A stretch of 64,000 nucleotides of DNA from NCBI GenBank assembly GCA_035084275.1, contig CM068757.1, forward strand, positions 12,214,001 through 12,278,000. Direction: 5' to 3'. Both the position numbers and the translations under genes were made by a program. Below are positions 1,450 to 32,636 of the stretch, piece by piece. Under the pieces are notes generated by a model. The model searched no databases, was not told the origin of the DNA, and saw only the letters and a program-made list of their open reading frames with translations. Each line of letters opens with the position of its first letter. The first letter of the stretch is position 1. The stretch comes from Hydrolagus colliei (lineage: Eukaryota).

Positions 1450-1613
1450 GAGCTGAAGAAGGAGCTCAAGCAGCTGATGCTGAGTGTTGTGCAGAAGCTT
1501 CATCGCTTGTCACCAATTAAAGAATCTTGGCATAAAACAGTCGCTAAACTGGAACAGGCATGTCTGCAATGTCACCAGCAGTACCTCAAAGCCAAGCACA
1601 ACCTGACAAAAAT
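1450..1613 (+). CDS. Coiled-coil coding exon, putative N-terminal extension of IRAG1 (ELKKELKQLMLSVVQKLHRL...KAKHNLTK)
   Basis: Pyrimidine tract plus ttaag acceptor and gtatgt donor; 164 nt ending in phase 2, matching the phase-2 start of exon 2635; heptad-like L/K/E pattern. Confidence 0.65.
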
Positions 1614-2634
1614 GTATGTAAATTCCTACTAATCAATCTAACTGAGTGATGTACTGTAATATACCAGGGACCGACCATATGTGGAGTCCTGTAGACTAGT
1701 GGTCAGAGCGCTCACCTTGCGAGCGAGAGGATCAAGGTTTGAATCCAAGGTGGGGTGAAACCTCAGGCAAGTTTCCCTACTCAACATGCCTCTGTTCACT
1801 CAACAGTAAGTAGGAACCTGATGTCTATTCTGAAATTGCCCCTTTGCAACTCAGCGCTCTTCATCTGCTGCCCTGGAGTGTCTGGATACATTGTTCTGGG
1901 CTTTTTTTTGGCCTATTTCCCATATAATAATAATAACAATAATAATCCTTGCATTTGATATAGCGCTTTCCACATCTTAACAACGTCCCAAAGCGCTTCA
2001 CAGAATATACTGTAAAGTGAATTGACTGTATATTTGTGGGCGAATCGCGGCAGCCAATTGCGCACAGCAGTGTCCCACATACAGTCATGGATTGAAATGA
2101 CCAATTTTATTATTGTGTTTTTTTTTGAGGGATTATTATTAGGCGTGTGGAGTAAGGAAACTTGCCCAAGGTTTTGCCCTGACCTGCCTGGATTCGAACA
2201 CAGGTCTCCCCAGCTTGGCCTCCCCAGCTTGCAAGACAAGTGCTCTAACCACTGAGCCACAGGAGCTCCATATACTGTACTGTAGTATAATATGGGATGA
2301 GATAAAATGGCTGGAGCGGCTTTCATTTTCTCAACTTGTTTAAAATTTCCTAGTGATTCTAGCCCCTTATCCCATCCCCAGCTTCCGCCCTCTGCTCAAT
2401 GAATTCGGGCTTGCTCCATATTATCCCTTCCCCAAAATGTGGCACCAGAAATGGCTGAACTTTCCAATTCTACATTCCTAACTTTGGAGCTCACTCCCTT
2501 GACCCCTCTCTATTTAGCTTCAAGTCCCACCTCTCCAATCACGCTTGTTTTCACCTCTCCGATTCTCCCCTTGCTCCATACCCACTAGCACCACCAATCA
2601 TTATCCTTCTTAACTTGTTGTTCCTGTTGCATAG

Positions 2635-3289
2635 AACCAAAGAACTGGAACTTCAGAAAAGGCTGAAGGAAGAGGCGGAAAATAAAGCTGTCTATGCTCA
2701 GTGCCGGGCAGAGGAGGCAAAAGAGGTTCTCAGAACCAGCCACGACCAACAGGCCAGGAAGAGCATGGAACATGTGAAGGAAGTTAAGGACGAGGCAGGC
2801 ATCTTGGTGATGGAGGAGACGGTCAAGGTGTTGGGCGGGGTAGTGGCCTGTTCGGAGTGCGCGTCGCTGGAGACCAGGCTGAAAGTTGGTGAACCCGAGG
2901 AACGAGAAAAAAGAATGGAGGAGAGTATGGCAGCTGCTCCGGAGAGCTCTGAGGGGAGAGCTCAGTCTGAAGTAGACAGGGCCAATGAGGCAGAGAGACC
3001 AACGGTGGAGGCTTTGCAGGCAGCAGAGGAAGGAAGGGTAGCAGATGGGGTCCTGATAGAAGAAATGGAGAGGGTGAAGGAAGAAGTCAGGCAGAACCTG
3101 TTGGAGACCAGTGGGAAAGTGACAGAAATGGAACACAAAGAGGCTGGGATGGAATGGATGGTCAACGCACCACATTGTATGACAGGCAGAGGTACAGCGG
3201 GGGTGTTGGACGAAAGCTTGTTTGGCCAAGCCGCAAGCTCAAAGAGCGGGAAGAAAACCCCAGCGGGAAATGTGAGGGAAGGAAAGGAG
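2635..3289 (+). CDS. Large Glu-rich/coiled-coil coding exon (TKELELQKRLKEEAENKA...NVREGKE), putative N-terminal extension of IRAG1
   Basis: Lies within the 256-aa ORF 2615-3385; acceptor ttgttcctgttgcatag, donor gag|gtacgt; 655 nt, phase 2 to 0; purine-rich coding composition, not repeat-derived. Confidence 0.75.
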
Positions 3290-6200
3290 GTACGTACCGT
3301 GTTTTTAATGTCTGACAGTGATGGGAGTGGAATAGGGGAAGGAGCCCAACTCCTCTCTTCACAGAGGATCCATGTTCAAGTCTGAACATCACATATCACT
3401 CAAAACCTGTGTCCCTCACTGGCAATGCCAACCTGAGTTTACAGTCCAGACTAACATTCCAGTGCAGTGACATGGGAACATCAAGTATTGGAAGTGCCGT
3501 CCTTCAGATGAAAAATTAAGCTGAGAATTGTCTGACCTCCGATCACATTGTACGACTCAAAAAGAGAAGGGAATTCTCCTGGTGCCTGCCCCAGCCAGCA
3601 ATCCCTCCTCCCCCCACCCCAGCCCCCCACCATCAGATAATAATACTAGAAATTATAGTACTGTAATAATAATAATCCTTATATTTGATAAAGCACCTTA
3701 TCATGTTGTCGAGTCGTCCAAAGTGTTTGGTAAAAAATTGATTGACTATGTACAGTATTTTGTGGGTGAAACATTAGCATCAACGGAGACATTAACCTAT
3801 CCGATCTTCATTCTGTTTGTGAGACCTTGCCCAATGCAAACCGGCTGCCCCGTTTACCACCATGTATGGTCACTGCACGTGACAGAAATTACTGTAGCTG
3901 GGAAGAGCTTTGAAGTCTTTTAGGCGCTACATTCAAATGCAAACTCAACTGCTGTGGCATACATTTAAGTTGGATTACGGATAAATTTTAATTTCCAGTA
4001 AAGAAACACGATGAGGACTGAAATAGACTGTTTCCTAACAGCACACTACAGAATGTCATAGCATGGGACCCTGCCAATACCAAAAGTTATTTGCAACATA
4101 AACTAATGGTAGCAAACAGTAGTTGTGATTTCAATTGAGCATTCAGATTCACTCGTCACAATGCAAACTCTGAACCCAGGTCCATTTCCCCAATAGGTAA
4201 CCAAGAAGTGTGTGTACTATAGGATCCCCATACTGAGCTCCCCACTCCCTGATGTTTATAGTAAGATTAATTATAACCTCTGGTAATAAGTAACATGGAT
4301 TCAATCCATTTTAACGACCTTTTGACATTTAACTCATCAACCAGTCCAGTGGAATCTGAATTAAAAAGAGAAGGAAATTTCTTTCTCTTGGTGTCCTGGC
4401 CAACAAACCCCACAATAAAATTAGTTGTTGACTTCATTGACTGTTTGTGGGACAACATTCCACACACAATTGGCTCAGTTTCTGTATTTTCAGGATTTAT
4501 AGTTAATCCTGTGATGTACTTTGAAGCATCCGCTTGGCATGAAAGGAGCTACGTCAAATGCAAGGGTTATTATTATTGTTTCACAAGCACCAATGAGCAA
4601 TGTGTTTGCTTTCATAACATGAGAAAATTAAATTGACCTTATTTGTATTTGCAGTTGAGTTTAGTCATGGCACCCATTGAAACTATTTTTTATGAATAAC
4701 GTTAAAGCAACTGGGTAGGTCTGGGGAACCAAGATTGGAGGGGACGGAAGAAGGCCGGTGTGTAACTGACGTTATTTGCATCAAAATTTAGTTTTTTTTT
4801 AAATAAAAAATATTAAATGTGTTTTATTCCCTTTTATAAGAAAGGTAAGGCTTTTTTTTTTACTTTTGAAGGCCACATAGACCCGTTGAAGTGAGATTTT
4901 TGTGATGGAGCGAGCACAAAACCCACAGAGTTCATTTAAAAACAAAACATTTACACTTATTATTTGAACGCGGGGATAAATAATCCCCGTTGTCGTTAAT
5001 GTTCATGAAAACATTTACCACATTCTACAAATGTTTGGACGGTCTGGGCAAATGAAGCCTGTGTGTTTTATTACTCATTGCTTCCTGTTTGTTTTTAACA
5101 TTTTAAATATAACCCAAAACTTCATTTGGGAGATTCATCCATGTAAATATTCACAAGTTTTTTTTATTAAGTCATAGATTTTCTTCCCCACTCATATACA
5201 GTCTGTCGTGTAGCCTACCTTAGTGGTTAGAATGCTCGCCTCACAAACGAGAGGACCTGGGTTCGATTTCTGGGCAGGTGTCTTTACTCCACAAGCCTCT
5301 GTTCACCTGGCAGTAAACTGTTTGTTACCATCGCTTTTCCGGGGGTAAAATTCCCTTTTGTTTCAAAATAATAATCTGGTCACTCGATCCACGACTGTTT
5401 GTGGGGCACTGCTGTGCGCAATTGGCTGCTGTATTTCGCCCACAAAATATACAGTCAATTCACTTTAGAGTATATTCTATGAAGCGCTTTGAGACATCTG
5501 GAAGACATGATGAGGCACAAAATCAAATTATATATGTATTTTGCACTAAATTTACATCATAACAGTTTGCGAGTATGCGTGCAAAATCATGGGAAAATAT
5601 CTTTGCACAATACACATGCAAAAAGAAATCTACATCCAGACTTTGAACCTATTCCTGGCAGCTGTGACCTTTTAGTCATTGTGAAATCTTTCTGTGGCCA
5701 AGCCACTGAGGTCAGAAACTGTACCTAGGTTCGCAACCCATGTGGCCATAAAGGTTTAAGATAACAATAACAACTTGCACTTATATATCTCTCATGCAGG
5801 GTAGCGTCTCAGTGCACGTTGCCATAGGATTGCACAAAAACAAAATCCTAAATTTAGTCTTTGAATCTGGAGGCTGGCTTCTTCAAAACCTACTCAAAAA
5901 TAATCCCTCAAGAAAAAAAACAAGAATAAATTGATTATTTCAATCCACGACTGTTTGTGAGATACTGCTGTGCGCAATTGGCTGCCGCATTTCACCCACA
6001 AATAGACAGTATATTCTGTGAAGTGCTTTCAGGCATCCAGAAGACGTGATAAGTGCTATATCAAAAATCTTCCAAAAATCTCTTCAAAATGGAAATGGGT
6101 TAATTTCTTCACGGCTGTGTTGTGGAGCATTGCTATGTGCAAATTGGCTGCCATGTCCTCGGTTCTTCCAAGCAAGATGGGTCAAAGCATCACCAGATAA

Positions 6201-6990
6201 TCGCTCCTTTGCTAAAGTCATCTCCACTGGATCCATTGCCGTTTCATGTACCAGCAATGTACACATTTTGCAGAAAGACGTTGGGTTTGATAATACAGCA
6301 GTTTGGAACCTCAAAAGATGTCAATCGTCATTTCGGAGTACTGTACTGGTAACTTAGCAACGGAGGCAAACCGATCGTTGTAACTAATAACGTTGCTTAG
6401 TTTTACTGCTTGAAATTATGATTGTGTCCATTGGTTAGCCTCCAAGCTGTCCTGTGCTGTTGTGTTGAAAGATTTAGACATTGAAATGCATTGAATCTCG
6501 TCAACAATACTGTAATCCTGGCACTCCATATTGGGCCTTAACATGATGTTGAAACATCTCAAAGTGCTCCACAGGAAATATTGTAGATGTGAATGAAAAG
6601 AATTTGTAGACAAACGCAGCAGCCAATTCGAGCACAGCAATGTCGCATAAACACCCGTTGAGTGAACGAACATATTGAGGATTGTCGGCCAGGACATGGA
6701 AGAGAAAACTCCTTTCTCTTTGCGAATAGGGATCTTTAACCTTCACCTGAAACAAGGACCGGCTCTCCAGCAATGAAGCAGCCCCTTCAATGCTGCGCTG
6801 GAGTGTCCGCCTGGACGGTGAGGTTAAAGCCACAACCTTCTGACTCAACGGCCAGAGCGCGACCGACTGCGCCAAGCTGGCCATAACCAATGGTACAGCC
6901 AAGACCACAGGTCTTCTTGTTTCTTACACTGTGTACACACATGTTCATGCAATGAGCTCTAAATGATCTTCTCTTGGCCCTACATCACAG

Positions 6991-7141
6991 TGTATGGGAG
7001 GTGGTCCGTCCCTGGTGGTCCGCACACAGGGCTCTGCAGAAAGGATTGTCGAAACCCTCCGGGAGGAGATCTCGACCACGCACAAGTGGGACCCACCACT
7101 AACAAACAGCAGCCCACAATCAGAAGACAAGATAACAGACG
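6991..7141 (+). CDS. Coding exon (CMGGGPSLVVRTQGSAERIVETLREEIS...SEDKITD), putative IRAG1 extension
   Basis: cacag acceptor and g|gtgagc donor; 151 nt, phase 0 to 1, fitting both neighbours. Confidence 0.6.
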
Positions 7142-8180
7142 GTGAGCAAAATAGCAACATGTTCCCTCTCTTCCCCCACCCCCACATCTCACCACCCCCG
7201 AACGTGTTGTGGGCTGTGGCAGCCATTGGCCCCAGCTGTTGCTGGAAGGAACCCCATTGAAAATTAAATAGTTCTCTGTTCCTTTGTATACAAGCGTTTA
7301 GGATCGTTGTGAAATATTCCGTGTTTCTATTTGTGTGGAGGAAGAGGGTGGGGAAGGTCGCATCTAGTGTAAATATTTGTAGATCCAAGAAATAAGACAA
7401 AAAACCCATGACCTATTCACTCAGCCATTGGATTCTCTAACCACATCCTTTTGTATCACTTGAGGATAAAGAACCAGTTTCTAAAAATAATTGGTTTCAT
7501 GAGAAAAAAAAAACTTCTGATTTTGATCTCGTCAATCTCTGCTCTCGATTGAAATATTTCTGCTCTGAAATGGGCAGTGACTACAGAGGATTAAGGAATG
7601 CAGGCACAATTTTAGAAACAGCTAAGGAAGTGCGAGAAACCAGACGTCCATCTTAAGTTTTCTGCTCTCGCGAGTTCAAAGTCCCGACACAGGGCTTGAA
7701 CCCACAACCTTCTGACTCAGGGCCGAGATGGTAATGACTGAGCCAGGTTGACACTTATGCATCTTAGCTATTTTATTACATGCGGAATTAAGAACGTAAG
7801 TCAAAATGATGCAGTTCAGGTCAATGGGTGGGATACAGATTGAACATTTTGGGCCTTTACACCGAATTACTCATTATTTTGTGCTCCTTTGCCTATCTGC
7901 CCTGTACAAAGTCGAGAAACGGAGAGACAGAGAGAGGAGATATGATGGGGCCTGGAATACAATCCACCCTACACGATAATCAAATAAAACAGAAACAAGA
8001 AAAAAAAAGCTGATATAAGAATTGAAAAGAGTGGGAAATGAAGAGAGAAAGGAACAAAACACGAAAAGAAGAAAAATATCAGTCTTGTGAAAGTTAGACT
8101 GAGAATGAGAGAAAAAGAATTAAAGAGTGTCAGCCCTGTAAAAATGATGGAGAATAAGAGTGAGAGAAAGAAAAGAGAAA

Positions 8181-8369
8181 NNNNNNNNNNNNNNNNNNNN
8201 NNNNNNNNNNNNNNNNNNNNNNNNNNNNNNNNNNNNNNNNNNNNNNNNNNNNNNNNNNNNNNNNNNNNNNNNNNNNNNNNNNNNNNNNNNNNNNNNNNNN
8301 NNNNNNNNNNNNNNNNNNNNNNNNNNNNNNNNNNNNNNNNNNNNNNNNNNNNNNNNNNNNNNNNNNNNN
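8181..8369. other. Assembly gap (189 N) next to GA-rich low-complexity sequence
   Basis: Run of n. Confidence 1.
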
Positions 8370-8631
8370 AGGAAGAATCTCTTGTTGGATGTAAATAATT
8401 AGCATCCCTTTGATTGGCCGTATGTGGAGTCGGTTGCCTGGTTATTGTTGCCCTGAGTAATGGGAACAGACAGGTGCAGATGATAAAAAAAATGGTGGCT
8501 GAGAAGTCAGATATTGTCATACAGTGTGGGCCCGTTTCCCCCCCACACACACACATCTCTGCTTTGTGCGTCACGCTTTTGAATTTTACTCCACTGCCCA
8601 GGCTGCTGCAGTGTTTTGCTAAATGAATCTG

Positions 8632-8735
8632 TGGTGAGTGTGTGTGTGAGTGTGCGTGTGAGTGCGTGCATGCAAGAGTGCGTGCGAGAGTACGTGTGTG
8701 AGTGTGAGAGTGCGTGTGTGTGAAAGTGCATGTGC
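8632..8735. repeat. Imperfect (GT)n microsatellite; a similar (CA)n lies at 50709-50800
   Basis: Direct reading. Confidence 0.85.
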
Positions 8736-8788
8736 GGTGGTTCAACCTTAGCATTGGTGCTGACCTGGAGTTTGCAATTTACTGACAG

Positions 8789-8853
8789 GAAGCACCGAGC
8801 CCAGACAACCGGAGGGGGTCGGTGGAGACAGGAATGACAATAGCAAAGTCAAG
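8789..8853 (+). CDS. Coding exon (GSTEPRQPEGVGGDRNDNSKVK), putative IRAG1 extension
   Basis: tgacag acceptor and aag|gtatgg donor; 65 nt, phase 1 to 0, bridging 7141 to 30794 in frame. Confidence 0.55.
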
Positions 8854-11800
8854 GTATGGAAGAAAAAAATGCATGGAAATATAACGACATCTCCTGATTT
8901 CAGTAGCTCAAATTTGCGGAGTCATTCTTCTGCCTTGCTCTCATGAGCGCAGTGACTTGTGTGTGTGTATGTGTGGTCCACACACAGGGAAGTTAGCACT
9001 CCACCAAATAACTGTAGGCCCTGGGATCAGAGTGTATTATTGGCAGTGGCTATTATTGGCTATGATTGACCATTGACTGCAGTTTTATAGTCCAAAGCTA
9101 ATAAAGAGCTGGATTGCGTCTTGACTCTGTGTTGTGGGTGAGTGGTATGTGCAGTTTTGGCCACCTTACTATCTAACAGACATTGAAGGTTGGAGTGGGT
9201 TCAGAGAGAAGAAGATTTGTGAATCGGAGACCAGTGGTGAACATTTTGAAAGAATTGAAATTCCTTCGCAAATTCTTCCATTTCCAATAGAGAAATGATT
9301 GAGGGACCAAGTTGCCTCGCTCTGCTTCATGCTTTCATCTGTTCTTAATGTTTAAATTGTACAGAGAGTAAGCGAGGTTTGGCAGTGATTTACTCGCCCA
9401 GTGGTTCAAATGGATTATAGACAGAGTTAGGCATATGTGGGAGACATTTGGATGCAGCAATCTGATTGAAAGGTTTAGATAGATTAGAGAGCACCATGCA
9501 TATATGGGAGTAATTACAAGGTTGTAATCTGATCGCAGGACTCAGATGGTGTATAAACTACAAGTGTGTGCTCAAGAAGTTTAGACAATTTATCTCAACC
9601 CAGAGATTAGATTAACGTCTTGAAATCAATCCACAGTGTCTGCTGTTTACGATATGTGATGCTCTCAGATTCACGTAGGAAGCGTCTTCTGTTTCTGGTA
9701 GCAATTGGCTGCGGTAAGGGAGAAAAATGGAGTGGATACAACAACTTGCATTTATATAGTACCCTTTACAAGCTGTAGCATCTCAGCACACTAAACAGTG
9801 GTGCAATTTGACCTTGAGAGAAGGGATCTAGCACAAGGCACAGTCAAAGAGTATTCAGGTACGATCTGAAGTTGGGCGCAAGTCAGAGGGATTGAGGCAG
9901 AGAGGTTCAGTGTCTCGAACCACAGTGAATGCTCAGAGAAGAATGAGATCAAATGGGTTGAAGAGACTTCTTTATCTGAACCTCTCCTCTGATCTCTTGG
10001 GATCTAGTGGTCTGGATTTCTTTATTGCTCCCAGTGGCATTTTGTCTTCTGAAAATACTGAATACATTCACACAAGCACAGTAATATTTCCCATGGCTTC
10101 GGTTCTGGTTCTTTGATGATTTTTCTTTTGTTTGCGGGGGGAGGGAGAGGGAATGATTAGCCATTTTGCTTCGAGTGGTTCGAGTGGCAGCAAAGGAAAG
10201 CAAGCTGGCTGTGTGTTTCGGTCTCAGGCTACATTGGGCTCAGCTGATTGAAGCCCCCACTACACATGGCCTGGATCTTATAGGTTTGGCAGCAGCTTTC
10301 AGCAATTTGATCATCATCGTGATCCCTCCCATGACCTTCCAGCTTGGAGCTTTGAAAAGTTAAAGTGTGTGCACAGCTTCCTGCTCAGCTCTGTTAACTG
10401 AGTACTGTACATATCCAGGGAGAGAGCGTTCGTCATGTCTTATGAATGTTGCTTCATTGATTCTTTTTGTTTTAGTGACTGGTAACCACCGCTATGCAAT
10501 TCAAGGGGGATAACAGAGACTTGTTGCAATAAATAGTAATAATCCTTACATTTGATATGCGACCTTATCCCGTCGTTGAGGCATCTCAAATTGTTTCACA
10601 GAATATATTGTAAAGTGGATTGATCGTGCGTTTTGTGGGTAGAATCATGGAACATGTTACAGATTGGATGACATGCGTGTTCGGGCGTGTGTTACTGGTA
10701 TGACAGAGCATGGTTCACCACCGCTTGCGCATACTTGTGCAATTGCAGCGAAAGTAAAAGCGATTAAAAAGCATCTGAAATCATTTTACCTTCTGGGAAA
10801 ATAGTCTTCTCCATTACAGTCCGAGGTACACAAGAACTGTGCGGTAGAAAAGTTTAATAAATATTTTAGGCTGGATTCCCAAACAGCAGATTTTCCTGAT
10901 AAATTAATGACTTTGCAGTGATCAGAAACGGTGTGACAAGCCCTCTAACAACTCCATTAAAATCAAGCACCTAACTCAGCCTGGCTCAGTTGGTGGTACT
11001 GTTGCCTCTGAGTCAAAAGGTTCACATGGAGGACTTTGAATTTATAGTGCACTCTGTAGATGGTGGATTCCTGTAGCTTTTTGGTTAGAGTACTCGCCTT
11101 GCAAGCGAAAGGACCTGGGTTCAATTCCCATACAGGGCAAAACATTGGACAACTTTCCTTACTCCACACCCTCTGCAGTAAATAGAAACACTGATGTTAG
11201 TCGATTGGCGGATGGTTCTCCAAAGTTAAAAATCCCTTTAAAAAACTATATTTTAATTCACGATTCCGGATACTGCTGTACACCATTCACTGCCGCATTT
11301 CGCATACAGAATATAGAGTCAATTAACTTTACACTATATTTTGCAAAGTGATTTAAGGCATCTCGAAGAAGGAATAAGGCACTATATCAAATGCAAGTAT
11401 TATTATTCTCATTATTGTCTGTCTTATTATTTGGCTGATGTTCTAATGTTTGGGATGAGCTGCTTTGTTGGAGGTGGCATCCTTTGGGTGAGACATTAAA
11501 CTGTTCAGGTGGGCGTTAACAAACCCTCGGAGTTATTTAAAAAGAGAACAGAGATTCTGGCGGTGTCCTGGCAACAATCAAGCAAATAAAAATATTTCAT
11601 AACTGTTTGTGTGACATTTGTCAAATTCAGGATGCTCTGAAGAATGCTGCATAAATAGAGTGAATTGTACATTTGTGGGTGAAACGCGGCAGCCAATTGC
11701 GCACTGTAGTATCCCACAAACAGTCGTGGATTGAAATGACCAATTTAATATTGTTTTTTTTCTTAAGGGATTATTATCAAGCATGTGGGGTAAAGAAACT

Positions 11801-12939
11801 TGCCCAAGGTTAAATTCTGCCAGGAATTGAACCCACGTCTCTCGCTTGCGAGGTGTGTACTCTAACCACTGAGCTACAGGACTCCCGAGTATACTCACCT
11901 CTATGATATCTGAAAGCCTGAGCTATGTTGTCTTACTAACTCTTCGCTTCTTATAATTCCCTAGATTGAAATTTAAAAAGAAAGGATGGTTAACGAATGT
12001 TAAAGAGGCATTGTGTGGAACTGGCCGATAATGCAGGCAGCCATGATTTGAGTTGCTTTAGAGTGATGTGATTTGCGTAGGTATATGGCAGTGTTGCGTT
12101 GTGCACACACTTGGTAGTGTACAGCTCACTGCTCAGGCATCTGTGGCAGGCTGGCCATCCAGTACTCTGAGGCTGATAACAATCAGAGCACATGTTGGAA
12201 TTCAGCAGCATGATTTCATCAAAGATTGCGTGTTGCTGAGAGAGAGGGAGAGAGGGAGTGGGGAGCGAACCCAAGAGCAAGAGAATTTTAATGAAGAGTT
12301 ACAATCCTTAATGACGTTCGATGCAGAGCACCTATAATGTTCTGGACTCTGCAAGTGCTTCGCTTGTAATTGCTGAGAACTGGAGTGACTGCATATTAGT
12401 AAGTGAGTGCAGCAGGCAATTAGCGCACAGCAATGTCCCGCAAACTGCAATGAAACGAATGATCAATCAATCTGAGAGATTTTGTGGCAAGACTGGGAGT
12501 TAACAGTTACCAGGCAATCTTCTGTTTTGGACGTTGATTCGCCAATGACTTGCAGATAAGATCTAGGCATTCGTTGACTTGCATCTAAATATAATGCCAG
12601 TTTTCTGACTAGTTACCCTTTCAATAGCTGGGATTGCTATGACCCTGGATGTATCCACACTTTCACAAGAGAGATGTGCAGCTTGTTGGAGCCCTGATTC
12701 TCTCAACCATTATTATTCCCAAAATGTTCCCAACAACAAAATTATATTTATATAGCGCCTTTCACATCAGGAGGACGTCCCAAGGCGCTGGACAGTTACC
12801 GCTTCAGACCCGAGCTGAGGACAGGGGTGCGTGGGGGAAGTGGGGGGATAAGGAGTTGCTGATGGGTCCATCGAAGAGGAGAGTCTTGAGACGAGACTTG
12901 AAAGAGGTCAGGGAGGGGGCAAGGCGGAGGCACTTGGGC

Positions 12940-18122: not shown

Positions 18123-18663
18123 CTAAATATAGGCTGTGCTAATCTAAACTATTAGCAAATTCTTTGCTAAACTTAATTCTTTTTTCCAAGAGAAATAAGA
18201 TAAGAGGATGTGGAGGAATTTCATTTATGGGAGCTTATTTGTCGTTCAAATTGAAGGTGGTGGTGGTGAAGTGTTGGGGGGGGGGGGTTGTGGGGGTAGG
18301 TGGGGGGGGGGGGGGGGGGGAGTCTGTGTGTGTGTGTGTGTGTGTTGGGGAGGGAAGTGGGGAGAGAGCGAGAGAGAAGCAGATGCTTGTTATATAAAGT
18401 TTAACAATTTTTTTTTCTTCTTCTTAGACGTTTTGTTTGTGTCGCTTCACTGAGCCAAAAGTTTCAGATGGAACAATGACCTTAAATGGTAAAAGCTCCC
18501 AGGAGTGAGAGAGAGGCTGCTTCTCAGAATAGCAGGAATTAAGTCAGTCGGTTGTAGGTAGAGGTTTTGATGTGAATAAGCAGGGATCCATCCTAGTGTT
18601 TGATCTGCCGATGGGGGCTGCTTGGGGACACGGCTCTTCCTAAAACGTTGGCTCCTATAAAGG
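18123..18663 (+). promoter_or_regulatory. Candidate internal muscle-type promoter: MEF2 site CTAAATATAG (18123-18132), TATATAAA (18391-18398), CArG boxes CCTTAAATGG (18480-18489) and CCTATAAAGG (18654-18663)
   Basis: Exact consensus matches read directly. IRAG1 is a smooth-muscle/platelet gene. ATG GTA AAA GCT CCC (MVKAP) at 18486. Confidence 0.65.
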
Positions 18664-21600: not shown

Positions 21601-21679
21601 TTATGGTTCGCCTATTGTTGTTGTGACATCTCAAAGAGCTTCCCAGGATATACTGCAAGGTAACTGTGTGCTCTATAAG

Positions 21680-21812
21680 TCGGGTATTAAGGGATACGGG
21701 GAGAAGGTGGGAAATTGGAATTGAAAGGATTTGTAGAGGTGCAGATCAGCCAAGATCTAATTAAATGGTCGAACCGGCTCAAAAGGCTAAATAGTGTACT
21801 ATGTTCCTATGT
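21680..21812 (+). mobile_element. 3' end of a second CR1-type family (ctatgttcctatg tail)
   Basis: aagggatacggggagaagg...gatcagcc...ggctcaaaaggctaaat..., typical of shark CR1 3' UTRs. Confidence 0.6.
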
Positions 21813-23470: not shown

Positions 23471-23545
23471 GTCGCCACGGCAACGGTCTTAGCGTAGCTT
23501 GTCCCAATCAGTCACCGCTCTAATCGGGAGGGCGCTGCATTGGCA
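23471..23545. promoter_or_regulatory. RFX X-box (GTCGCCACGGCAAC) plus CCAAT (23504-23508), a GC-box-like GGGAGGGCG and ATTGG
   Basis: Motif cluster in a locally CpG-richer, non-repeat patch. Confidence 0.45.
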
Positions 23546-26500
23546 ATACACTAGCACACTGGGCTCTGTGTGGGTGCCCGTCCCTCGACCCCATCCCCTT
23601 CCCCAGTACCGCTATCCAGAGGTCAGGGTTGTTTAATCCAAAACTCCTTCTCCCCGTGATTTTGTTTTCTCGGGGTTGGGTTGGGTGGTGGAGGGGGAGC
23701 AGGTGGTGGATGGGGGGATGGAACCGATAACGTAATCGCAATTTTCTTTTCAAATGTAACCTTCGGTTTGAGAAAGACCCGGGTTCGATTCCTGGGCAGG
23801 ATGAAACCTTCGGCAAGTTTCCGTACTCCACACGCCTCAGTTTACCTAGTAGTAATTAAGAACCCCAGTTGTTAGTGGACTGGTGGATTGCTCTTCTGAG
23901 GGAAATGATCACTCAAAAAAAAATGTGTTTACTCAACCGATGACTGTGTCTGCTAGGCTTTTACCACAAAGCACAGTTAGTCCTCTTCACAATATATAAC
24001 AACAACAACAAAATTACACTTGTATGGCGCCTTTCACGTCAGGAGGATGTCCCAACTTATTATTATTAATATATAACCTCAAGGATTAACCGGAGAAAGG
24101 AGCGGCCATGGAGGGAGGTTACAGGAGATGAGGAGAGAGAGCTCATCGGAGAATAGGGTGAGAGATGAGGAAGAGGTTAGAGCAGAGGGAGATCACTGGA
24201 AAACCACAGTGAATTGCATTTATATATTGCCTTTCATGCACTTCATGCTGAGCTGTGCTGCTTGCAGGGAGTTCCTGATATCTGACAACCATGTAGTGAG
24301 GGCTCAAACTCACACTTGTCGGCTATCTAATGACCGATACCATGAAGCACTTTGAGGATTATTGATGATTATTCCTTAACAAAATAACACGTAGATGAAG
24401 CTGAGGATGAGACATCTGCGTGGCAATGGAAGAGGGTCAATAGAAACTTTACAGCATAATGTCCCCCCCTCTGACCAGAACTTGGTCAAAACAGAATTTG
24501 ACCAGAACACTCCCAGTTCAAATGACTCCTCGCGGAATTTTGCAAATGGCCTGCTGCCTTTTCCTACAATAACAAGATGCCATCTTGAGATGTATGCAGA
24601 GACAGGCAAAATAATTTTTTTAAGTGAGATTGAAAAAGTAAATCAAGATTCTGTTAGGTATGGTTTCCAGACACCATTAATAATAATGCCTCAAAAAAAA
24701 CAATAATAATTTGTGGGACACTGCTGTGCGCAATTGGCTACTGTTTTGCCCACAAATATAGTCAATTCACTTTACAATATATTCTGTGAAGGCCTTTGAG
24801 ACGTCTAGAAGACATGAAAAGTGCTGTAGCACATGCAAGGATTATTATTATTATTTTGTGAAGCACTTTGTGACTTCCTTTCGGGTGAGCTTCCCTTCAC
24901 ACTGTAAACTGGTTGGCAGAACTACATGGAGGGGAGAGTTAGAAGATCTGAGCCATTTTGCAGGATAAGAAGGGCATTTGCCATGTTGTTGAAGACTGAC
25001 TCCCTAATAATACTATAACAAACAAAAATAATCTCAATTTTATTTGAGCATGAGCATGCCCCAAGGCAGGACCGTTTGTTTTCTTTTCTGCCCTGATTGG
25101 GAAAGATATGGAACAGACAGTATAAACCAGGCTCTCCTCTCCCCACCACATCCCTGCCGGCAACCTGGTCTAATGGATCCAGTATAATGTCATATGGTAT
25201 CTGCCATGTGCGATACTCTCCTTGATTGTTAGTGCACCATGATTGAGGGTTCCCAAACACAGCAGCAATGAGCTTTGCAAATATTGTATACAAGTTGTTG
25301 TTGTTATTGCAAATCCCTTGCCTCCTCAAGACCTTCCTCTTCGACCGCGCCTTGTGAAGGTCAAAACATCTCAAAGCTACTTTGTAGGTATTTGCTGTCG
25401 AGTGAAGTGACTATATATATATATATATGCAAATTCAGCAGCCAATGTGCGCACAAGAAACCTCCACAAACAAACATGAGGTGAACAACCCAATTTATCT
25501 GGAGGACTGTTGACCTGGGCAGGGTAATGGAGCAAGGTGGTTGTGTTTGAAGACATTGGACTTATTTAACAAATAGCTTGGGTCAATTGTGGTGAGAAAA
25601 AGAGACCTTTTTGTTTGTGTTTACAATGAGAAATCCCACTGATCTGCATACGCGCTGTCAGATTTCAGTCTGCGTCTTTACATTTGCCCATTGTGCACCG
25701 CCTGTGGTTCGAAATGTATTCGTTGTATCACCAAACCTCTCCTTCCATCGCCCACTGCTTGTTGTAAGTGCTAAACTGGGACGAGTGGAGGGAGAGAGCA
25801 CTGCAGCGATTATCAACAGCGCTCGAGGCAGCAAACCTGTTCTGGGATATTATCCAACAGTGTCGGCCGGCCGGCTTCTCTCTGATCCCCTCTTTGTAAG
25901 TGTCTCTCTACATGTACAGCGCGATTAAACAGTCCAGGGCTCTTCAGTCTTGAGAGAAGGCGCTTTAGCAGGTGAACCCTACAGAGGTGTGTATTGCCAT
26001 TTTAAATGGAGTTGGGGAAAAAAACAGAACATTAATTTAGCATACACCAAGACTAGATAACAAGAGGACACGGGTTTAGAGTTGGAATGGGGGCAATTTC
26101 AAGATACACAAGATAGGCAAAGGAAGCTTTTCTTTACCTGGAAGGCAATTAACAACTGGAGCAGCTTGCCCAGAAAGAGGCCTGGACGTTGGGACTCATT
26201 TTTTAAAAAGCAGCTCGATGCTGTGTTGGAATGATGGTAGTGTGGTTATTTTGAGATCAAATGAGCTGAACCAACTTTCTCATCCATTTCTGACCTTGTG
26301 AACCCGAGGAAGTGATTGTTAGTTCAGTAGTTTAGCTACTCTGCACATTGGCTCTATGCAAACCGAAAAGCTGGCTTTATTATGTAATCTGTTTAATTCT
26401 GGTCATGTTACATGTCGTCTGTGTCAAAACTATTGTACAAAACGTTTAAAAAAGATATTTTAGAAATAATAATAAATTGGTCGTTTCAATCCATGATCGG

Positions 26501-28196
26501 TTGTGGGACAATGCTGTGCATAATTGGCTGCCCGTTTTTCCCACAAAATATAGTCAATTCACTTTACAGTATATTCTGTGAAGCGCCTTGAGATGTCTCG
26601 AAGACATGGTAAGGCGCTATATCAAATGCAAGGATAACATTATTATTATTACGTCTTTGAAACTTCTCAAAGTGCTTCACAGAATAGGCTGTAAAGTATT
26701 GTGACAGTGTGTTTTGTGGGCAAAATACAACAGCCAACTTTGCACAGTAGTATCCCACAAGTAGTCGTGGGTTCGAATGATCCAATTTTCGTTTTTGGAG
26801 GGATTCCTAACCCTGGAAAGTGATCCGCCAATTGACTAACAACCAGGTTCCTACTCACTGCTGGGTGAGTATGCAACTTACTTGCATTTATATAGTGCCG
26901 TTCTTGCAGGATAGTGTCTCAGAGCTCTATGAATTTGATCTGCTAATGTAGTGCAATAATTCTTGCTGATAAATCACAAGAATAAAAGGAAGTGATTTGT
27001 GCTATTGTTCCGTAGCAGTGCTGGCCCAGTCCATCAGAGCTAACAAGCCGTCAAATTTATGACATGTCTATAGCCAGGTTTATTATAATATCCTCTTCAT
27101 TGGGCTAACTGCACATAAATAAAGGCACCTGCATGCATTTGAGGATTCTCTACATAGAAATTCCCTTAATACAGTATTCCGATCCCTAACAGAGCTATTC
27201 CTAGAGTACTGTAACAATAATAATCCTTTCATTTAATATAGCGCTTTTCACGTCTTCTAGACGTCTCAAAGCGCTTCACAGAATGTACTGTAAAGTGAAT
27301 TACAGGTGAAAAGCAGCAGCCAATTGTGCACAGCAGTGTCCCACAAACAGTCATGGATTGAAATGACCAATTTTATTAAGATGTGTTTTTTGGAGGGATT
27401 ATTATTAGGCATGTGGATTAAGGAAATTTGCCCATGGTTTCACCCTGACTTGCCTGTAGCTCAGGGGTTAGAGCACTCGATTCTCAAGTAAGAGGCCTGG
27501 GTTCAATTCCAGGCAGGATGAAACCGTGGGCAAGTTTCCTTATTCCACACATCTGATAATAATCCCTCAAGAAAAAAAAAATAATTTGGTCACTTCAATC
27601 CACAACTATTTGTGGGAGGGTCACTGCTGTCCGCAATTGGTTGCCGCGTACGCCCACATATATGCAGTCAATTCACTTTACAGTATATTCTGTGAAGCAC
27701 TTTGATCCGTCTAGAGGACGTGAAAAGCGCTACATCAAAAGCAAAGATTATTATTATTATCCCAAATCAGATGACGCATTCTCACGTATTGCATGATCAT
27801 TGCGGACTGCAAATGGCTTAGGAAAAAACATTTTCTACAGATATTTTCTGTGGTTATAGCAACCGCACACCACGTTTCACGATGCGTTGGATCCTGCCAA
27901 GAAAACGCTTTGCTACAGCTCGTGATTAAAGAGTGGGCTTTAGAGTGGCGACTGAATTGTGCTACAAAAATAAAGACAATCCCAGGTTGTGTAGCCGAGC
28001 GGGATTTTATGAGGTGCAGATGAGATTGTACATTTACGACACTAATCCACAGTTATTGCGATGACTTGAGAGACGCTCATTGTCTATGAATGTAAGAAAT
28101 CCGCACAAAAACAAAACTTGCATTGATATAGTGCCTACATGTAAGGGAATCTCTCACTTCACAGGGAGGAGGGGAGAGGACTGTTTGCTCGTGTGG

Positions 28197-28284
28197 TCCC
28201 CTTCCTCCTCCTCTTCCATCTCGCCCCACTCCATCTTTAAAGACAAATGGAGTGGGGCGAGATGGAAGAGGAGGAGGAAGGGGA
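28197..28284. repeat. Perfect 38-bp inverted repeat with a 12-nt loop
   Basis: 28197-28234 is the exact reverse complement of 28247-28284. Confidence 0.95.
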
Positions 28285-30793
28285 GTTCCAGGGATTAGGA
28301 GTGTAATTGCTGAAGGTTTGGTCACCAATGGGTGGGATGGGGACATGGGATGCACGCACAATAGGCTCGCATTTGCTGATCGGGGCCATCAGTGGCAGGG
28401 TGGGGGTAGGGGTTGAGCAGAAGAGTAGAATTCTGTAGGTGATGACAAAAGTGGGTAAAAGTGAAGATCTTGATATTGATCGGAAGACAATAGGGGCTGG
28501 CGGGGACACTTAAAACAGTTTATAAAATGTACCGGAAGTCTTGAACAGTCCAGACTATATATACGCACACAGTACATCTTTACACAACCCCCAAATACAA
28601 ACCTCTAGCCAAGTGGAATTCCACCCACTTCTTTGCCATGCTAAATATATGGCAAAGAATTGCAAAATGGTATGACTCAACAGGCAGTTCAGAATTTGAG
28701 AATGAATGGCATTCTGCCCTGAGAAGATAGGGTGATATTTGTTTGAGTCTGAAACCCGCTTTAATTAGTCTTGGCTGACTTCTAACCCTTTGGAAAGAGT
28801 TTACAATCCTTTATTTATGGCAGCACTCAAACCACGATCATGGCAACAGGGGAGTGTCTCAATGCTTTTCTTCCCTCCCTCCCGTCTCTCAATTCTACTT
28901 TTATTTGTCCACCCAGCTGCGCTCACTTCCTGTTCCATGCATCCTTACTGCTTTGACATTAAAGCAACGTTGTATAATCTCCTAATCTAACCCAGTTAAA
29001 GACCCTCTTGGCACTATTCAAAAAGAGAAGGGAGTTTCTCCCGGTATCCTAGCCAACATTCCCCTGAATAAAATTGGTCATTGCATTTCCCCTGCTGTCT
29101 CCCATCACTCACTTTGTGTGACTGTTAATTGCTAGAACAAGTGAGAAATCAACAAGTAACTGCACTCAACAAAAACAACAACAAAATTACATTTGAATAG
29201 CGCCTTTCATGTCAGTAGGACGTCCCTGCATAATAATAACACAAGGGAAACCCTCCACCGATCGGTTCTCTATAGCATTGCCTCCCTTAAAGAACAGGTC
29301 TACTGTGGACCCTTGCATACACCTGGATTCCGAGACTGAGTAACTGGTTACACATGTTAAACAATGGGTGATCAGGACTTCACTTCCTGCGCTTTGCATT
29401 CTATGTGTAAGGAGTATCGCTCATGTCACTTTTTGCGCTCTATGCGCTAGAAGTGCTGCCAACATCATCTCACAAAGGAAGCGACATCAGCAGTGCTTCT
29501 GGCTCGCAGGGCGCATATATGCAATGGGCAGGATGTGATGTGGAGCGTGGAGTCCTGTAGCTTAGTGCTTAGAGCACTTGCTCACCACCGAGAGGACCTA
29601 GGTTTGATTCCTCGTCAGGGAGAAACTTCAGACGAGTTTCCTTATCCACACTCCTCTGTTTACGTAGCAGTAATTAGGAATCTGGTTGTTAGTTGATTGG
29701 CGGATTGATTTCCTGAGTAAACTAACGCCTTCAAAAAAATTATTATTTGGTCACTCAATTCATGACAGTTTATGGCACACTGTGCTGGGTGCCATGTTTT
29801 GAACTCCACCTCTCATTTCTCACTAGACCTGTTCTTCAAGGGAGGCAGTGCTGTGGAGAAGGGAATGGTAGACGATTTCTACTGCGTTATTATTGTGACT
29901 GAGTGCAGTTAATTGTTGTTGCACTCAGCTGACCACAGTAAAGATAAATATCGCGCAGTCTTTACCAAACACAACGAATATGAAGTGCAGTGAATGTTAT
30001 TACGTAGGCCAACGGGACAGTTAATCTGCGCCAGCACTGTCTTAAGCAAATGACATCTTAAGTATCCTGGCTCAGCGGTGCGGTAATGTAATTTGAATCC
30101 TGCTCAATACCTTGGCACAACTTCTGCGCATTCGTCAAAGTGACATTTTATTGGTCATAAGTGTCTTATTGGCACATCCCCTTGGAATCACTGGTGAACT
30201 ATTCACGTCCGGGGAATGTTTGTTTCAGACTCCAAAGACGTAAGGACGTGAACTGTAAGCATTGGATTAGACCGACCGAGACTTGTGCAGAGGCTGTGGC
30301 TATGAATTCTGTCTATGTGATAGCAGGGAAGGAGAGAAACGTAATAGGTGCATAAGCCCAGAGCGCAGACAGGATCCTCGAATTGGAGCATTAAACAACT
30401 GTTCTCCATTGAAATTCTCATCCAAGTGATAAAGCAAACTTTGCAGTTGTCCAACAGATTAGTGGGGAATGGGAGATCTGTTGCTGTGGGAGTGGGCTTG
30501 TTGAAGGCGTTGGTGATATTAAAGACATACAAGATCCACAAATATACCTCTGGCTATTAAACCAAACAGCAATACCAGTCATACCTCCAGATGTGCCTAT
30601 ATATTTTTGTTAAAATCCTTATTAGCTGACTTCCATCCAAATGGAGGTTGATAGTCAGTTAAGGAGTGAAATGTTAGCCGTTGTTTTAGGATACGTGCCT
30701 TTGTTTGACAAGTTTCACTGGCGCGGGAGGCTTCCCTGACTGAATGGTTCTCCTAAACATTCCTAATCCATTGTTTTTCCTCTTTGGATCCAG

Positions 30794-30905
30794 AAACCAG
30801 AGACTGATGTCCGGACTTCACCCCAGGAGAGCTTTGGGAGAGCACTAGAGGTCCAGGCTGGCCAGTCATTGGGCCATGGCCACTCAACACAGCAGGCTCT
30901 TCTAG
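30794..30905 (+). CDS. Coding exon (KPETDVRTSPQESFGRALEVQAGQ...QQALL), IRAG1 N-terminal region
   Basis: Branch-like cctaat, pyrimidine tract and ccag acceptor; tag|gtaacc donor; 112 nt, phase 0 to 1, open. Confidence 0.65.
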
Positions 30906-31402
30906 GTAACCAAAGGCAATACTGACCTAGCCTTAATAATAATAATCTTTACATTTGAGAAAGCTCCTTATCACGTCTTCGAGACATCTCAAAGCGCTTC
31001 ACAGAACATACTATGAGTATAGGTTGTGGGCAAAACTCGGCAGCTGATAGATAGATAGATAGATTGATTGCTCACAGCGGTTGTTGGGAGGTAGTGGGTC
31101 TCAAACCGCTTCACAGGATTTAAAAGTAAAGTTTAGATTCTATATACTGTATTTAGTAGGTACCAAACATCCCACAAATGGCCATGAAGTGAATAACCAA
31201 TTTTTTTTATATTGTGGAGTGGACTGCGCAGGGGTTGTTGGTCAGAATATCAAGGAACTACCCGTCTCTTTTTGATGTTTAACATCCACCCACATAGATG
31301 ATGGGAATGACATGCACAAATCTCTTGCTTTAAGTCTCGATCTTGTTGCCCTCGAGTGAGCAGACCGCAGGGCTTAATGTCTCTTGCGCTGCCCCTTACC
31401 AG

Positions 31403-31538
31403 ATGCCTTTACTCTTGAACCTTCTGAGACTCATCAGCCGTCGGGAGGCCAAGGAGATCTGAGACCATCGTCGCTGGGCCACAAGGCGACTGTAGCAAGA
31501 TCTTTTCTTGCAGAGAACCACACACAGATCCCAAACAG
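31403..31538 (+). CDS. Coding exon (DAFTLEPSETHQPSGG...HTQIPNR), IRAG1 N-terminal region
   Basis: cttaccag acceptor and cag|gtgaat donor; 136 nt, phase 1 to 2, open. Confidence 0.65.
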
Positions 31539-32197
31539 GTGAATTGACATTGTAATGCCTTTCAGTGATACAAACCTTGCATTTGACAGAACACCCTTCA
31601 TCCTGAGAGGTTTTGAAACATACAGGAATTATATACTAATCGAGGTGGTGCCACACAATGATTTTGTGATTGGTCACCGAATGTTCTCTCTCTGCTTGGT
31701 TACAAAAGTAACAAAGTTGTATTTACACAACGCTTTGCACTTCGGGAGGACGTCCCAAAGCGCTGGACCTTCAAGGTTTAAGGTTTGCACCAGAGCTATG
31801 GACTGGAGTTAAGAGGGCAATGGGAGAGGAGGGTGGGAAAGGGATATGAGAAGGAAGTCACTTTTGCAGCTCTCTCATGCCTCCTGGTGGCTGGCTACCA
31901 GAAGTATTCAAAGGGCTTGGGGTGGTGGGAGGGGGCTTTCTTTACTTTCCGCCCTTGCAGAGGAGGGACAACATGCAAAATGGAGTGCGGTGGGGGAGAT
32001 GGGAGGTGGTGGGAGGTGGGGCAAATGGAGGCCAGAAAAGAAGGGAGACCAATATACTTCAAAGCGCTTTGTCACAAAGCGATGAATAGCAATCAAATTG
32101 TCTGGCCATTTGATTTTGTGCCAATATCATTGAGAATGTCTTGAAGCCTGCAGTCTGTGTCTAGTGTAGTGACTGTGTTTTTGGAAGCAGACTGTCT

Positions 32198-32403
32198 TTT
32201 TTTTTGTTGAGGAGCGGGAGCAGATTCACAGCAAATAGCCACAAAACGAGTGTCCGATTCATATGTTCTTGGAAGGTGGTTGTGAGTGCGAAGGTGAGGG
32301 TGCGGAGGTTAATTTGTGAGGACCACAGTTTGGTTTGGACAATCTAAAGCATGTGTAAGACAGACACCCAGTTGAATCTGCTCCCGCTCCTCAACAAAAA
32401 AAA
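32198..32403. repeat. Perfect 31-bp inverted repeat with a 144-nt spacer
   Basis: T8GTTGAGGAGCGGGAGCAGATTCA (32198-32228) versus TGAATCTGCTCCCGCTCCTCAACA8 (32373-32403). Confidence 0.95.
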
Positions 32404-32524
32404 TTGGATCTTTAACAATCTGAGATGAGTCATGTTGTGTCTTCATTTAGAACTTGGCAAAGACAATTTATCAAATTGTTCAAATTACTTTCATTTAGAA
32501 TTTTTCTCTTTGTGTTTATCAAAG

Positions 32525-32636
32525 AAATAACTCAGCCGTGAGCATCTCTGAGTCGCAGTCCGAGGAACGGGCATCAGAGGGACTCAACCCCATAGCCAGG
32601 AACGCACAATCCAGAGAACCCCCAGCATCAGACGAA
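32525..32636 (+). CDS. Coding exon (NNSAVSISESQSEERASEGLNPIARNAQSREPPASDE), IRAG1 N-terminal region
   Basis: Long T tract plus aaag acceptor and gaa|gtaagt donor; 112 nt, phase 2 to 0. Confidence 0.65.

What the first reader, a model, noticed from the sequence alone, without database searches (positions are those of the whole stretch)
1450..32636. A 'giant' IRAG1: about 465 extra N-terminal residues, including coiled coil, spliced in frame upstream of the conventional protein
Seen in sequence: seven exons (1450-1613, 2635-3289, 6991-7141, 8789-8853, 30794-30905, 31403-31538, 32525-32636) have canonical splice sites and no stops. Their phases chain without a break (0-2, 2-0, 0-1, 1-0, 0-1, 1-2, 2-0) into the IRAG1 exon at 35565, giving at least 1381 aa from 1450 with no start codon fixed yet. 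The first two exons are coiled-coil-like (ELKKELKQL..., KELELQKRLKEEAE). Established: mammalian IRAG1 is about 900 aa, and the paralog IRAG2/LRMP has a long N-terminally extended form in zebrafish (futile cycle) that links the nucleus to the centrosome. Inference: this lineage keeps an ancestral long IRAG1 with a cytoskeletal-adaptor-like N-terminus.
Basis: partly seen in the sequence, partly recalled or inferred. Interest (0 to 1): 0.85.

Follow-up and report, generated by a model that had tools for sequence, protein, structure and literature searches.

The report
KASH5-like module upstream of chimaera IRAG1
Four of the seven proposed exons are real coding exons of a dynein-adaptor-like (KASH5/futile-cycle type) module lying just upstream of IRAG1 on the same strand and in a compatible frame, but nothing available here shows that they are spliced onto IRAG1.

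Summary
All seven intervals are stop-free in the stated frames, have AG/GT sites and chain in phase.

- **Exons 1-4 (1450-8853) are real.** Exon 2 matches one protein among 1.84 billion representatives: Callorhinchus XP_042197492.1, "IRAG2-like", 706 aa. That protein covers exons 1-4 without a break and has a KASH_CCD domain upstream.
- **Shark and ray homologues add EF-hand_9.** None of the 12 public models, from 11 species, contains MRVI1. Each ends at a different exon.
- **The module is a third paralogue.** It is about 30-32% identical to both long IRAG2 and KASH5. Identity within each group is 50-60%.
- **It has no membrane anchor of its own in the window**. The direct splice 8853 to 35565 is in frame.
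- **Exons 5-7 are unverified.** Their phase chain is one of 12 equally good three-exon chains.
- **No RNA data exist for this organism.** The only run is DNA.
- **A good AATAAA lies 154 nt after the read-through stop of exon 4**, which supports a rival reading.

Verdict: an ancestral long IRAG1 is plausible (about 0.55) but unproven.

The parts
1450..1613 (+). Coding exon 1 of the window. It is not the gene's first exon. It corresponds to P0001 residues 322-376.
   Evidence: AG/GT sites and open frame. 50/53 identical to P0001. Also matched by P0002-P0005.
2635..3289 (+). Coding exon 2. Helical, coiled-coil-like, with a disordered tail.
   Evidence: Sole hit P0001, E 3.4e-71. 157/227 identical with 3 in-frame gaps. 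Matched by P0003-P0005. AlphaFold helices at 2-67 and 105-176.
6991..7141 (+). Coding exon 3.
   Evidence: 35/49 identical to P0001 residues 604-652. AG/GT sites.
8181..8369 (.). Assembly gap (189 N) inside the intron between exons 3 and 4.
   Evidence: P0001 is continuous from exon 3 to exon 4. The gap was not read or filled.
8789..8853 (+). Coding exon 4. It ends in phase 0.
   Evidence: 17/19 identical to P0001 residues 656-674. Donor AAG|gtatgg.
8854..9105 (+). Read-through of the exon 4 donor: 30 codons, TGA at 8944-8946, then AATAAA at 9100 followed by GT-rich sequence. This could be an alternative 3' end.
   Evidence: P0001 ends in this read-through, 21/29 identical. The AATAAA has a GT fraction of 0.82, the 98th percentile of the 42 AATAAA in the window.
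30794..30905 (+). Proposed exon 5, unverified.
   Evidence: Open frame and AG/GT only. Weak donor (1.4). No homologue. Composition percentile 0.92.
31403..31538 (+). Proposed exon 6, unverified.
   Evidence: Open frame and AG/GT only. Composition percentile 0.68.
32525..32636 (+). Proposed exon 7, unverified.
   Evidence: Open frame and AG/GT only. Composition percentile 0.985.
35565..35774 (+). First recognisable IRAG1 exon. It is open in phase 0 from its acceptor, 46 codons before the in-frame ATG.
Evidence: No Pfam family.
48556..50295 (+). Three MRVI1-domain exons: 48556-48696, 49471-49602 and about 50143-50295.
   Evidence: Pfam PF05781 at 69.3, 45.2 and 87.5 bits, cut-off 27. tblastn of long IRAG2 proteins.
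59330..59576 (+). Last IRAG1 exon: transmembrane segment and KASH-like luminal tail ending in APV, then the stop codon.
   Evidence: PF05781 at 53.6 bits, profile positions 454-533. It is the only strong TM-plus-tail open frame on the + strand, hydropathy 3.22.

Best explanation
**Shown.** Exons 1-4 are the 3' part of an EF-hand/coiled-coil module of the KASH5/futile-cycle type. In KASH5 this kind of module recruits and activates dynein. Here the module is a third paralogue, distinct from KASH5 and from the N-terminus of long IRAG2. It lies directly upstream of IRAG1 on the same strand.

**Inferred.** The module is most likely the ancestral 5' half of IRAG1. An upstream promoter would drive a long isoform in which exon 4 (phase 0) is spliced in frame to IRAG1 exons. 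The splice could go directly to 35565 or pass through small bridging exons such as 5-7. The product would be a protein anchored in the ER or nuclear envelope, of perhaps 1,800-2,000 aa. Its N-terminus would bind dynein. Its IRAG1 body would carry the MRVI1 coiled coil, the membrane anchor and a KASH-like tail. The conventional short IRAG1 would come from an internal promoter.
For: - **Exons 1-4 are real.** They are orthologous to XP_042197492.1, which carries KASH_CCD (E 1.1e-44).
- **Shark and ray orthologues carry EF-hand_9 plus KASH_CCD**.
- **Collinear with long IRAG2.** P0001 residues 1-473 align with P0025 residues 354-774. P0025 has the N-module, MRVI1 and a KASH tail in one chain.
- **Third paralogue.** The tree gives three starred clades. 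Over EF-hand plus coiled coil the module is 31-32% identical to long IRAG2 and 30% to KASH5. Bird versus teleost IRAG2 is 50-51%, and ray versus shark or chimaera is 54-60%.
- **The public models look 3'-truncated.** All 12 models lack MRVI1. The five longest stop after different exons with unrelated tails, three of them by read-through of a donor.
- **No TM/KASH-like terminal frame precedes IRAG1 in the window.** The only one is the IRAG1 last exon.
- **Frames are compatible.** Exon 4 ends in phase 0 and the 35565 exon is open in phase 0 from its acceptor.
- **A soluble form may be costly.** Cytosolic KASH5 lacking its anchor inhibits dynein's interphase functions (PMC10071310, passages).
Against: - **No RNA data.** The only run holding the locus is DNA, with depth of about 50 over introns and no splice joints.
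- **Annotation splits the two.** Public annotation in 11 species treats the module as a gene apart from IRAG1. None of the 12 models has MRVI1.
- **A possible separate 3' end.** A well-formed AATAAA follows the read-through stop of exon 4, and the Callorhinchus model ends in that read-through.
- **Exons 5-7 are no better than chance**.
- **The open frame at 35565 has another possible explanation.** An ATG|gtaaaa in the CArG/MEF2 region near 18486 could start translation in phase 0.
- **Gaps in what I could check.** I could not retrieve any cartilaginous-fish IRAG1 protein. Orthology of the body to IRAG1 rather than IRAG2 was not formally tested.
Confidence: 0.55

Rival explanations
1. Gene fission. 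The module is now an independent gene or isoform. Its transcripts ignore the donor at 8853, read 30 codons to TGA at 8944-8946, and are polyadenylated after AATAAA at 9100. The product would be a soluble EF-hand/coiled-coil protein without a membrane anchor. IRAG1 would be transcribed separately from an internal promoter.
For: - The RefSeq model P0001 ends in exactly this read-through, and the window is 21/29 identical there.
- AATAAA lies 154 nt after the stop. The GT fraction after it is 0.82, the 98th percentile of the 42 AATAAA in the window.
- None of the 12 public models joins MRVI1.
- A CArG/MEF2/TATA region lies in the 22-kb interval.
Against: - Models from other species end after exon 1 (Heptranchias), exon 2 (Rhincodon, S. 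torazame) or exon 3 (Hemitrygon). They share no C-terminus, which looks like model truncation.
- The 72% identity in the read-through equals that of the weakly constrained exons 2 and 3, so it does not show coding constraint.
- Anchorless KASH5 sequesters dynein (PMC10071310, passages).
- An AATAAA within 300 nt is expected about one time in five by spacing alone.
Confidence: 0.3
2. Relic. The module is a decaying remnant of the ancestral 5' half. It no longer makes a functional product in this lineage, and the open frames are left over.
For: - Exons 2 and 3 are only 69-71% identical between two chimaeras.
- The middle of exon 2 is less coiled-coil-like than in sharks.
- The Callorhinchus model lacks the EF-hand part.
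Against: - 218 codons of exon 2 stay open in both chimaeras, with only in-frame gaps.
- Exons 1 and 4 are 94% and 89% identical.
- EF-hand_9 and KASH_CCD score well above the Pfam cut-offs across sharks, rays and a chimaera.
Confidence: 0.07

Closest known systems
Zebrafish Futile cycle/Lrmp and the long IRAG2 of birds and teleosts (for example P0025 Coturnix, 1454 aa; P0022 Phycodurus, 1461 aa)
   Same: The order of parts is the same: EF-hand_9, KASH_CCD, a second coiled coil, a disordered linker, MRVI1, a TM segment and a KASH-like tail. The N-halves of cartilaginous fishes are collinear with it as far as window exon 2. Horn 2013 (PMC3787381, passages) describes the KASH5-like N-terminal extension of Fue/Lrmp and its dynein role.
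   Different: It is a different paralogue, only 31-32% identical over EF-hand plus coiled coil. The downstream body here is IRAG1-like, not IRAG2. Exon 48556-48696 is 20-21/47 identical to long IRAG2, against 29/47 between teleost and bird IRAG2. One continuous transcript is documented for IRAG2 models but not here.
KASH5 (CCDC155)
   Same: It has EF-hand_9 plus KASH_CCD, the dynein LIC-binding activating-adaptor module (PMC10071310, passages). The Atlas puts KASH5 and LRMP-fragment clusters nearest to P0003.
   Different: It forms a separate starred clade at 30% identity. KASH5 has its own TM/KASH and no MRVI1. The module here has no anchor of its own in the window.
Mammalian IRAG1/MRVI1 (IRAG1a 911 aa and IRAG1b 859 aa, per PMC10298018, passages)
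   Same: MRVI1 domain exons and a C-terminal membrane anchor.
   Different: No KASH5-like N-terminus is described for IRAG1 in the passages read, and none turned up in searches. The tail here is KASH-like (ending in APV). By my recall, not by any search, mammalian IRAG1 lacks such a tail.
RefSeq XP_042197492.1, 'inositol 1,4,5-triphosphate receptor associated 2-like' [Callorhinchus milii]
   Same: It is the orthologue of window exons 1-4, at 69-94% identity per exon.
   Different: It is annotated as a 706-aa stand-alone protein that ends in the read-through of exon 4. It lacks EF-hand_9.

Membership tests
IRAG/MRVI1 family (Pfam PF05781) | MRVI1 domain | tested here: met
   Four window exon peptides score above the 27-bit cut-off, at 69.3, 45.2, 87.5 and 53.6 bits. 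A fifth scores 16.9, below it.
IRAG/MRVI1 family (Pfam PF05781) | C-terminal transmembrane anchor (type II membrane protein) | tested here: met
   The frame 59292-59573 has a 19-aa window of mean hydropathy 3.22 followed by a 41-aa tail.
IRAG1 rather than IRAG2 (orthology of the body) | Groups with IRAG1 proteins and carries the PKG-Ibeta-binding region | tested here: inconclusive
   No IRAG1 protein could be retrieved. All 120 listed hits were IRAG2. Exon 48556-48696 is 43-45% identical to long IRAG2, against 62% between bird and teleost IRAG2, which is paralogue level. The match to the IRAG1-specific region at 39484-39657 rests on recall only.
Long Fue/Lrmp-type architecture in one polypeptide | EF-hand_9 and KASH_CCD at the N-terminus | tested here: inconclusive
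   They are present in orthologues: KASH_CCD in P0001, and both domains in 9 of the other 11 cartilaginous-fish models (P0005 has no Pfam domain on record, P0027 has EF-hand_9 only). The corresponding exons lie upstream of this window and were not seen in this genome.
Long Fue/Lrmp-type architecture in one polypeptide | Second coiled coil collinear with long IRAG2 | tested here: met
   P0001 residues 1-473 align with P0025 residues 354-774, which covers window exon 1 and about 97 aa of exon 2.
Long Fue/Lrmp-type architecture in one polypeptide | N-module and MRVI1 body on one mRNA | not testable with these tools
Only same strand, order and frame compatibility are shown.
Long Fue/Lrmp-type architecture in one polypeptide | KASH-like luminal tail | tested here: met
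   The tail ends in APV and aligns with the long IRAG2 tail over conserved Q, L, W, Y, G, H and the final PV (alignment A2). PF05781 profile positions 454-533 are matched.
KASH5 orthologue | Groups with KASH5 and has its own TM/KASH after the coiled coil | tested here: not met
   It forms a separate starred clade at 30% identity. There is no private TM/KASH frame before IRAG1.

The most novel reading that the evidence does not exclude
In cartilaginous fishes IRAG1 would still be made as one giant LINC-type protein. It would join an EF-hand dynein-activating adaptor to the MRVI1 (IP3-receptor/PKG-associated) body and a KASH-like tail. KASH5, IRAG1 and IRAG2 would then be three descendants of a single Fue-like ancestor. 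At exon 4, a choice between the 8853 donor and the AATAAA at 9100 would switch between a membrane-anchored adaptor and a soluble form that sequesters dynein. This would resemble the membrane/secreted switch of IgM heavy chains.
Probability: 0.15. Interest if true: 0.7.

Novelty: new member of a known kind. Interest (0 to 1): 0.42.

Why it matters
Horn et al. 2013 proposed that KASH5 and LRMP arose from a Fue-like gene through loss of 5' or 3' exons (PMC3787381, passages). A third KASH5-like module sitting in front of IRAG1 would extend that picture to the whole family. It would imply that IRAG1, known as a smooth-muscle and platelet cGMP-kinase substrate, descends from a nuclear-envelope dynein adaptor. 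It also suggests that the "IRAG2-like" genes annotated in at least 11 cartilaginous-fish genomes may be misnamed and 3'-truncated. The claim can be tested with one RT-PCR or one long-read data set.

Tried and rejected
**Steps that led nowhere**

- **RNA junctions.** The single run found (X1) holds 100% of the exon 2 words. It proved to be DNA contigs, with depth of about 50-70 in unique bins and contigs running through introns. None of the 15 listed joints is at a proposed junction, and 517 more were not shown. It therefore gives no expression or splice evidence.
- **Pfam on the seven exon peptides and the 35565 exon.** None of the 8 had a family above its cut-off.
- **Atlas search with the 232-aa IRAG1 exon.** No usable hit.
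- **PDB sequence searches with two IRAG1 exon peptides.** Only chance-level hits.
- **Alignment A2.** Eleven exon rows aligned with two long IRAG2 proteins came out shredded. I replaced it with A3.
- **Search with A3.** The listing was flooded by long IRAG2: 810 hits, of which the best 120 were listed, all carrying PF05781, PF14658 and PF14662. No IRAG1 protein was obtained, so I could not inspect the N-termini of cartilaginous-fish IRAG1 models.
- **Earlier findings, genome-wide by words.** Nothing on the upstream part of this gene.
- **Literature.** Searches found no paper describing an IRAG1 with a KASH5-like N-terminus. Only search listings were seen, except for three papers read as passages: PMC3787381, PMC10298018 and PMC10071310. 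Supplements were not opened.

**Readings rejected**

- **Orthology of the module to IRAG2.** Rejected.
- **A hidden private KASH exon.** Rejected.
- **The phase chain of exons 5-7 as evidence.** Rejected.


Full report
**What is in the sequence.** All seven intervals are flanked by AG and GT and have no stop in the stated frame. Their phases chain 0-2, 2-0, 0-1, 1-0, 0-1, 1-2, 2-0, for a total of 1395 nt or 465 codons. The bases printed at the four split codons cannot form stops. The only N run is 8181-8369 (189 N), inside the intron between exons 3 and 4. Downstream on the same strand lie the recognisable IRAG1 exons, from 35565 to the stop at 59576. Four of these exon peptides exceed the Pfam cut-off for MRVI1. 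I neither built nor searched the joined spliced protein. Every exon was handled on its own.

**RNA evidence is not available.** The run search with exon 2 listed one run, X1, not on record as RNA. I laid it on 30300-36200. It proved to be genomic contigs, with depth of about 50-70 in all unique bins and contigs running straight through the introns. None of the 15 listed joints is at a proposed junction, and 517 more were not shown.

**Exons 1-4 are real coding exons.**
- Exon 2 (218 aa) has exactly one match with E at most 0.001 among 1.84 billion representative proteins. This is P0001: E 3.4e-71, 72% identity, query residues 1-218 on residues 377-602 of a 706-aa protein.
- P0001 is XP_042197492.1, 'inositol 1,4,5-triphosphate receptor associated 2-like' of Callorhinchus milii.
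- tblastn places P0001 on 1426-1614, 2636-3289, 6970-7143 and 8776-8901.
- Per exon the window is 50/53, 157/227 (three in-frame gaps), 35/49 and 17/19 identical to it.
- P0001 passes from exon 3 to exon 4 without a missing residue, so no exon is hidden in the N gap relative to that model. I did not test physical continuity across the gap.
- P0001 residues 1-321 have no match in the window. The gene therefore starts upstream of the window, and the extension is larger than 465 aa.
- I infer that the window comes from a chimaera other than Callorhinchus.

**What the module is.**
- P0001 carries Pfam KASH_CCD at residues 1-178 (E 1.1e-44, 153 bits, cut-off 43.3).
- Searches with P0001 and with a profile gave 12 cartilaginous-fish proteins from 11 species. 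Nine of the other 11 models carry EF-hand_9 plus KASH_CCD (P0005 has no Pfam domain on record, P0027 has EF-hand_9 only). None of the 12 has MRVI1.
- The same searches found mammalian KASH5. They also found bird and teleost IRAG2 or LRMP of about 1,440-1,490 aa that carry EF-hand_9, KASH_CCD and MRVI1 in one chain. In one search, all 120 listed hits had this architecture.
- The N-halves of cartilaginous fishes are collinear with long IRAG2 well beyond the Pfam domains. P0001 residues 1-473 align with quail P0025 residues 354-774, which covers window exon 1 and the first 97 or so residues of exon 2. Ray P0003 residues 136-694 align with P0025 residues 214-775.
- A single-sequence AlphaFold model of exon 2 shows helices at 2-67 and 105-176 and a disordered tail (mean pLDDT 68.8).
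- The Atlas places P0003 nearest to LRMP-fragment and KASH5 clusters, followed by ninein-like and Rab11-FIP3-type EF-hand proteins.
- KASH5 is an EF-hand-type activating adaptor for dynein. Zebrafish Fue/Lrmp has a KASH5-like N-terminal extension (PMC10071310 and PMC3787381, passages only).

**It is a third paralogue.**
- A maximum-likelihood tree of 26 N-modules gives three starred clades: 9 cartilaginous-fish N-halves, 12 long IRAG2 and 5 KASH5. Their stems are long, about 1.2, 0.66 and 1.67. The tool warns that long branches meet.
- Pairwise, over EF-hand_9 plus KASH_CCD, the ray protein is 31-32% identical to long IRAG2 and 30% to KASH5. Quail IRAG2 is 30-31% identical to KASH5.
- Quail versus teleost IRAG2 is 50-51%. 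Ray versus shark or chimaera is 54-60%.
- An IRAG2 orthologue would be expected near 50%. The public name 'IRAG2-like' is therefore probably a best-hit name.
- The module is as old as the KASH5/IRAG2 split, and it lies at the IRAG1 locus.

**Is it joined to IRAG1? Arguments for.**
- The order, strand and distance fit.
- Exon 4 ends in phase 0. The 35565 exon is open in phase 0 from its strong acceptor, 46 codons before its in-frame ATG. The direct splice 8853 to 35565 is therefore in frame without exons 5-7.
- The module has no membrane anchor of its own. The only strong TM-plus-tail frame on the + strand is the IRAG1 last exon.
- The public models have no common C-terminus. Heptranchias stops after exon 1. 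Rhincodon and S. torazame stop after exon 2. Hemitrygon stops after exon 3, and Callorhinchus after exon 4. Three of these stop by read-through of a donor. This is what truncated models look like.
- Anchorless KASH5 disturbs dynein function.

**Is it joined to IRAG1? Arguments against.**
- There is no RNA evidence.
- None of the 12 public models joins MRVI1.
- The read-through after 8853 stops at 8944-8946. It is followed at 9100 by an AATAAA whose downstream 40 nt are 82% G+T, the 98th percentile of the 42 AATAAA in the window.

**Exons 5-7.**
- They have no homologue and no Pfam family.
- With thresholds set at their own weakest sites, 8854-35564 holds 19 open candidate exons. These give 12 three-exon, 7 two-exon and 2 one-exon in-phase chains. 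The scores use my rough matrices. These matrices also rate the homology-proven exon 4 acceptor poorly, at -0.4.
- Their amino-acid make-up lies at the 92nd, 68th and 98.5th percentile of 202 non-coding open intervals. This is suggestive only.
- They lie in single-copy DNA.
- They remain hypotheses.

**Identity of the body.** The MRVI1 membership is tested. That the body is IRAG1 rather than IRAG2 rests on three things. The first is paralogue-level identity to long IRAG2: 20-21/47 in exon 48556-48696, against 29/47 between teleost and bird IRAG2. The third is my recall of the human protein. No IRAG1 sequence was available for a formal test.

**Verdict.** The module is of the KASH5/Fue type and plausibly the ancestral 5' half of IRAG1, but the join is inferred, not shown. 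I put the long isoform at about 0.55, a separate or fissioned gene at about 0.30, and a relic at about 0.07. I found no paper describing an IRAG1 with such an N-terminus. The architecture itself is known for IRAG2, so this would be a new member of a known kind.

Noticed in passing
window 59292-59576: The IRAG1 last exon encodes a strong transmembrane segment and a 41-aa luminal tail ending in APV. Both ends of a LINC-type protein are therefore present at this locus.
   Followed up: partly
window 18123-18663: This region holds a MEF2-like CTAAATATAG, a TATAAAG and two CArG-like boxes (CCTTAAATGG, CCTATAAAGG). It is a candidate internal promoter and phase-0 start for a short IRAG1.
   Followed up: partly
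window 9100-9170: AATAAA followed by a very GT-rich stretch, 154 nt after the stop of the exon 4 read-through. It looks like a poly(A) site.
   Followed up: partly
window 33317-34306: A 330-codon open frame with a reverse-transcriptase domain (RVT_1, E 2.1e-14) lies in the intron before the 35565 exon. Contig depth in X1 there reaches the millions, so it is a very high-copy retroelement.
   Followed up: partly
window 30985-31077, 32772-33022, 35028-35420 and many other places: Very high-copy short repeats, apparently tRNA-derived SINE-like elements, whose translations recur throughout the open-frame lists on both strands.
   Followed up: no
window 30341, 31088, 31554, 34941, 35537, 35781: Single-copy contigs of run X1 differ from the window by single bases at full depth. 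X1 is therefore probably another individual or haplotype, and it independently supports the assembly of this stretch.
   Followed up: no
window 18280-18350: A long G run followed by (GT)n low-complexity sequence, just upstream of the TATA-like element.
   Followed up: no
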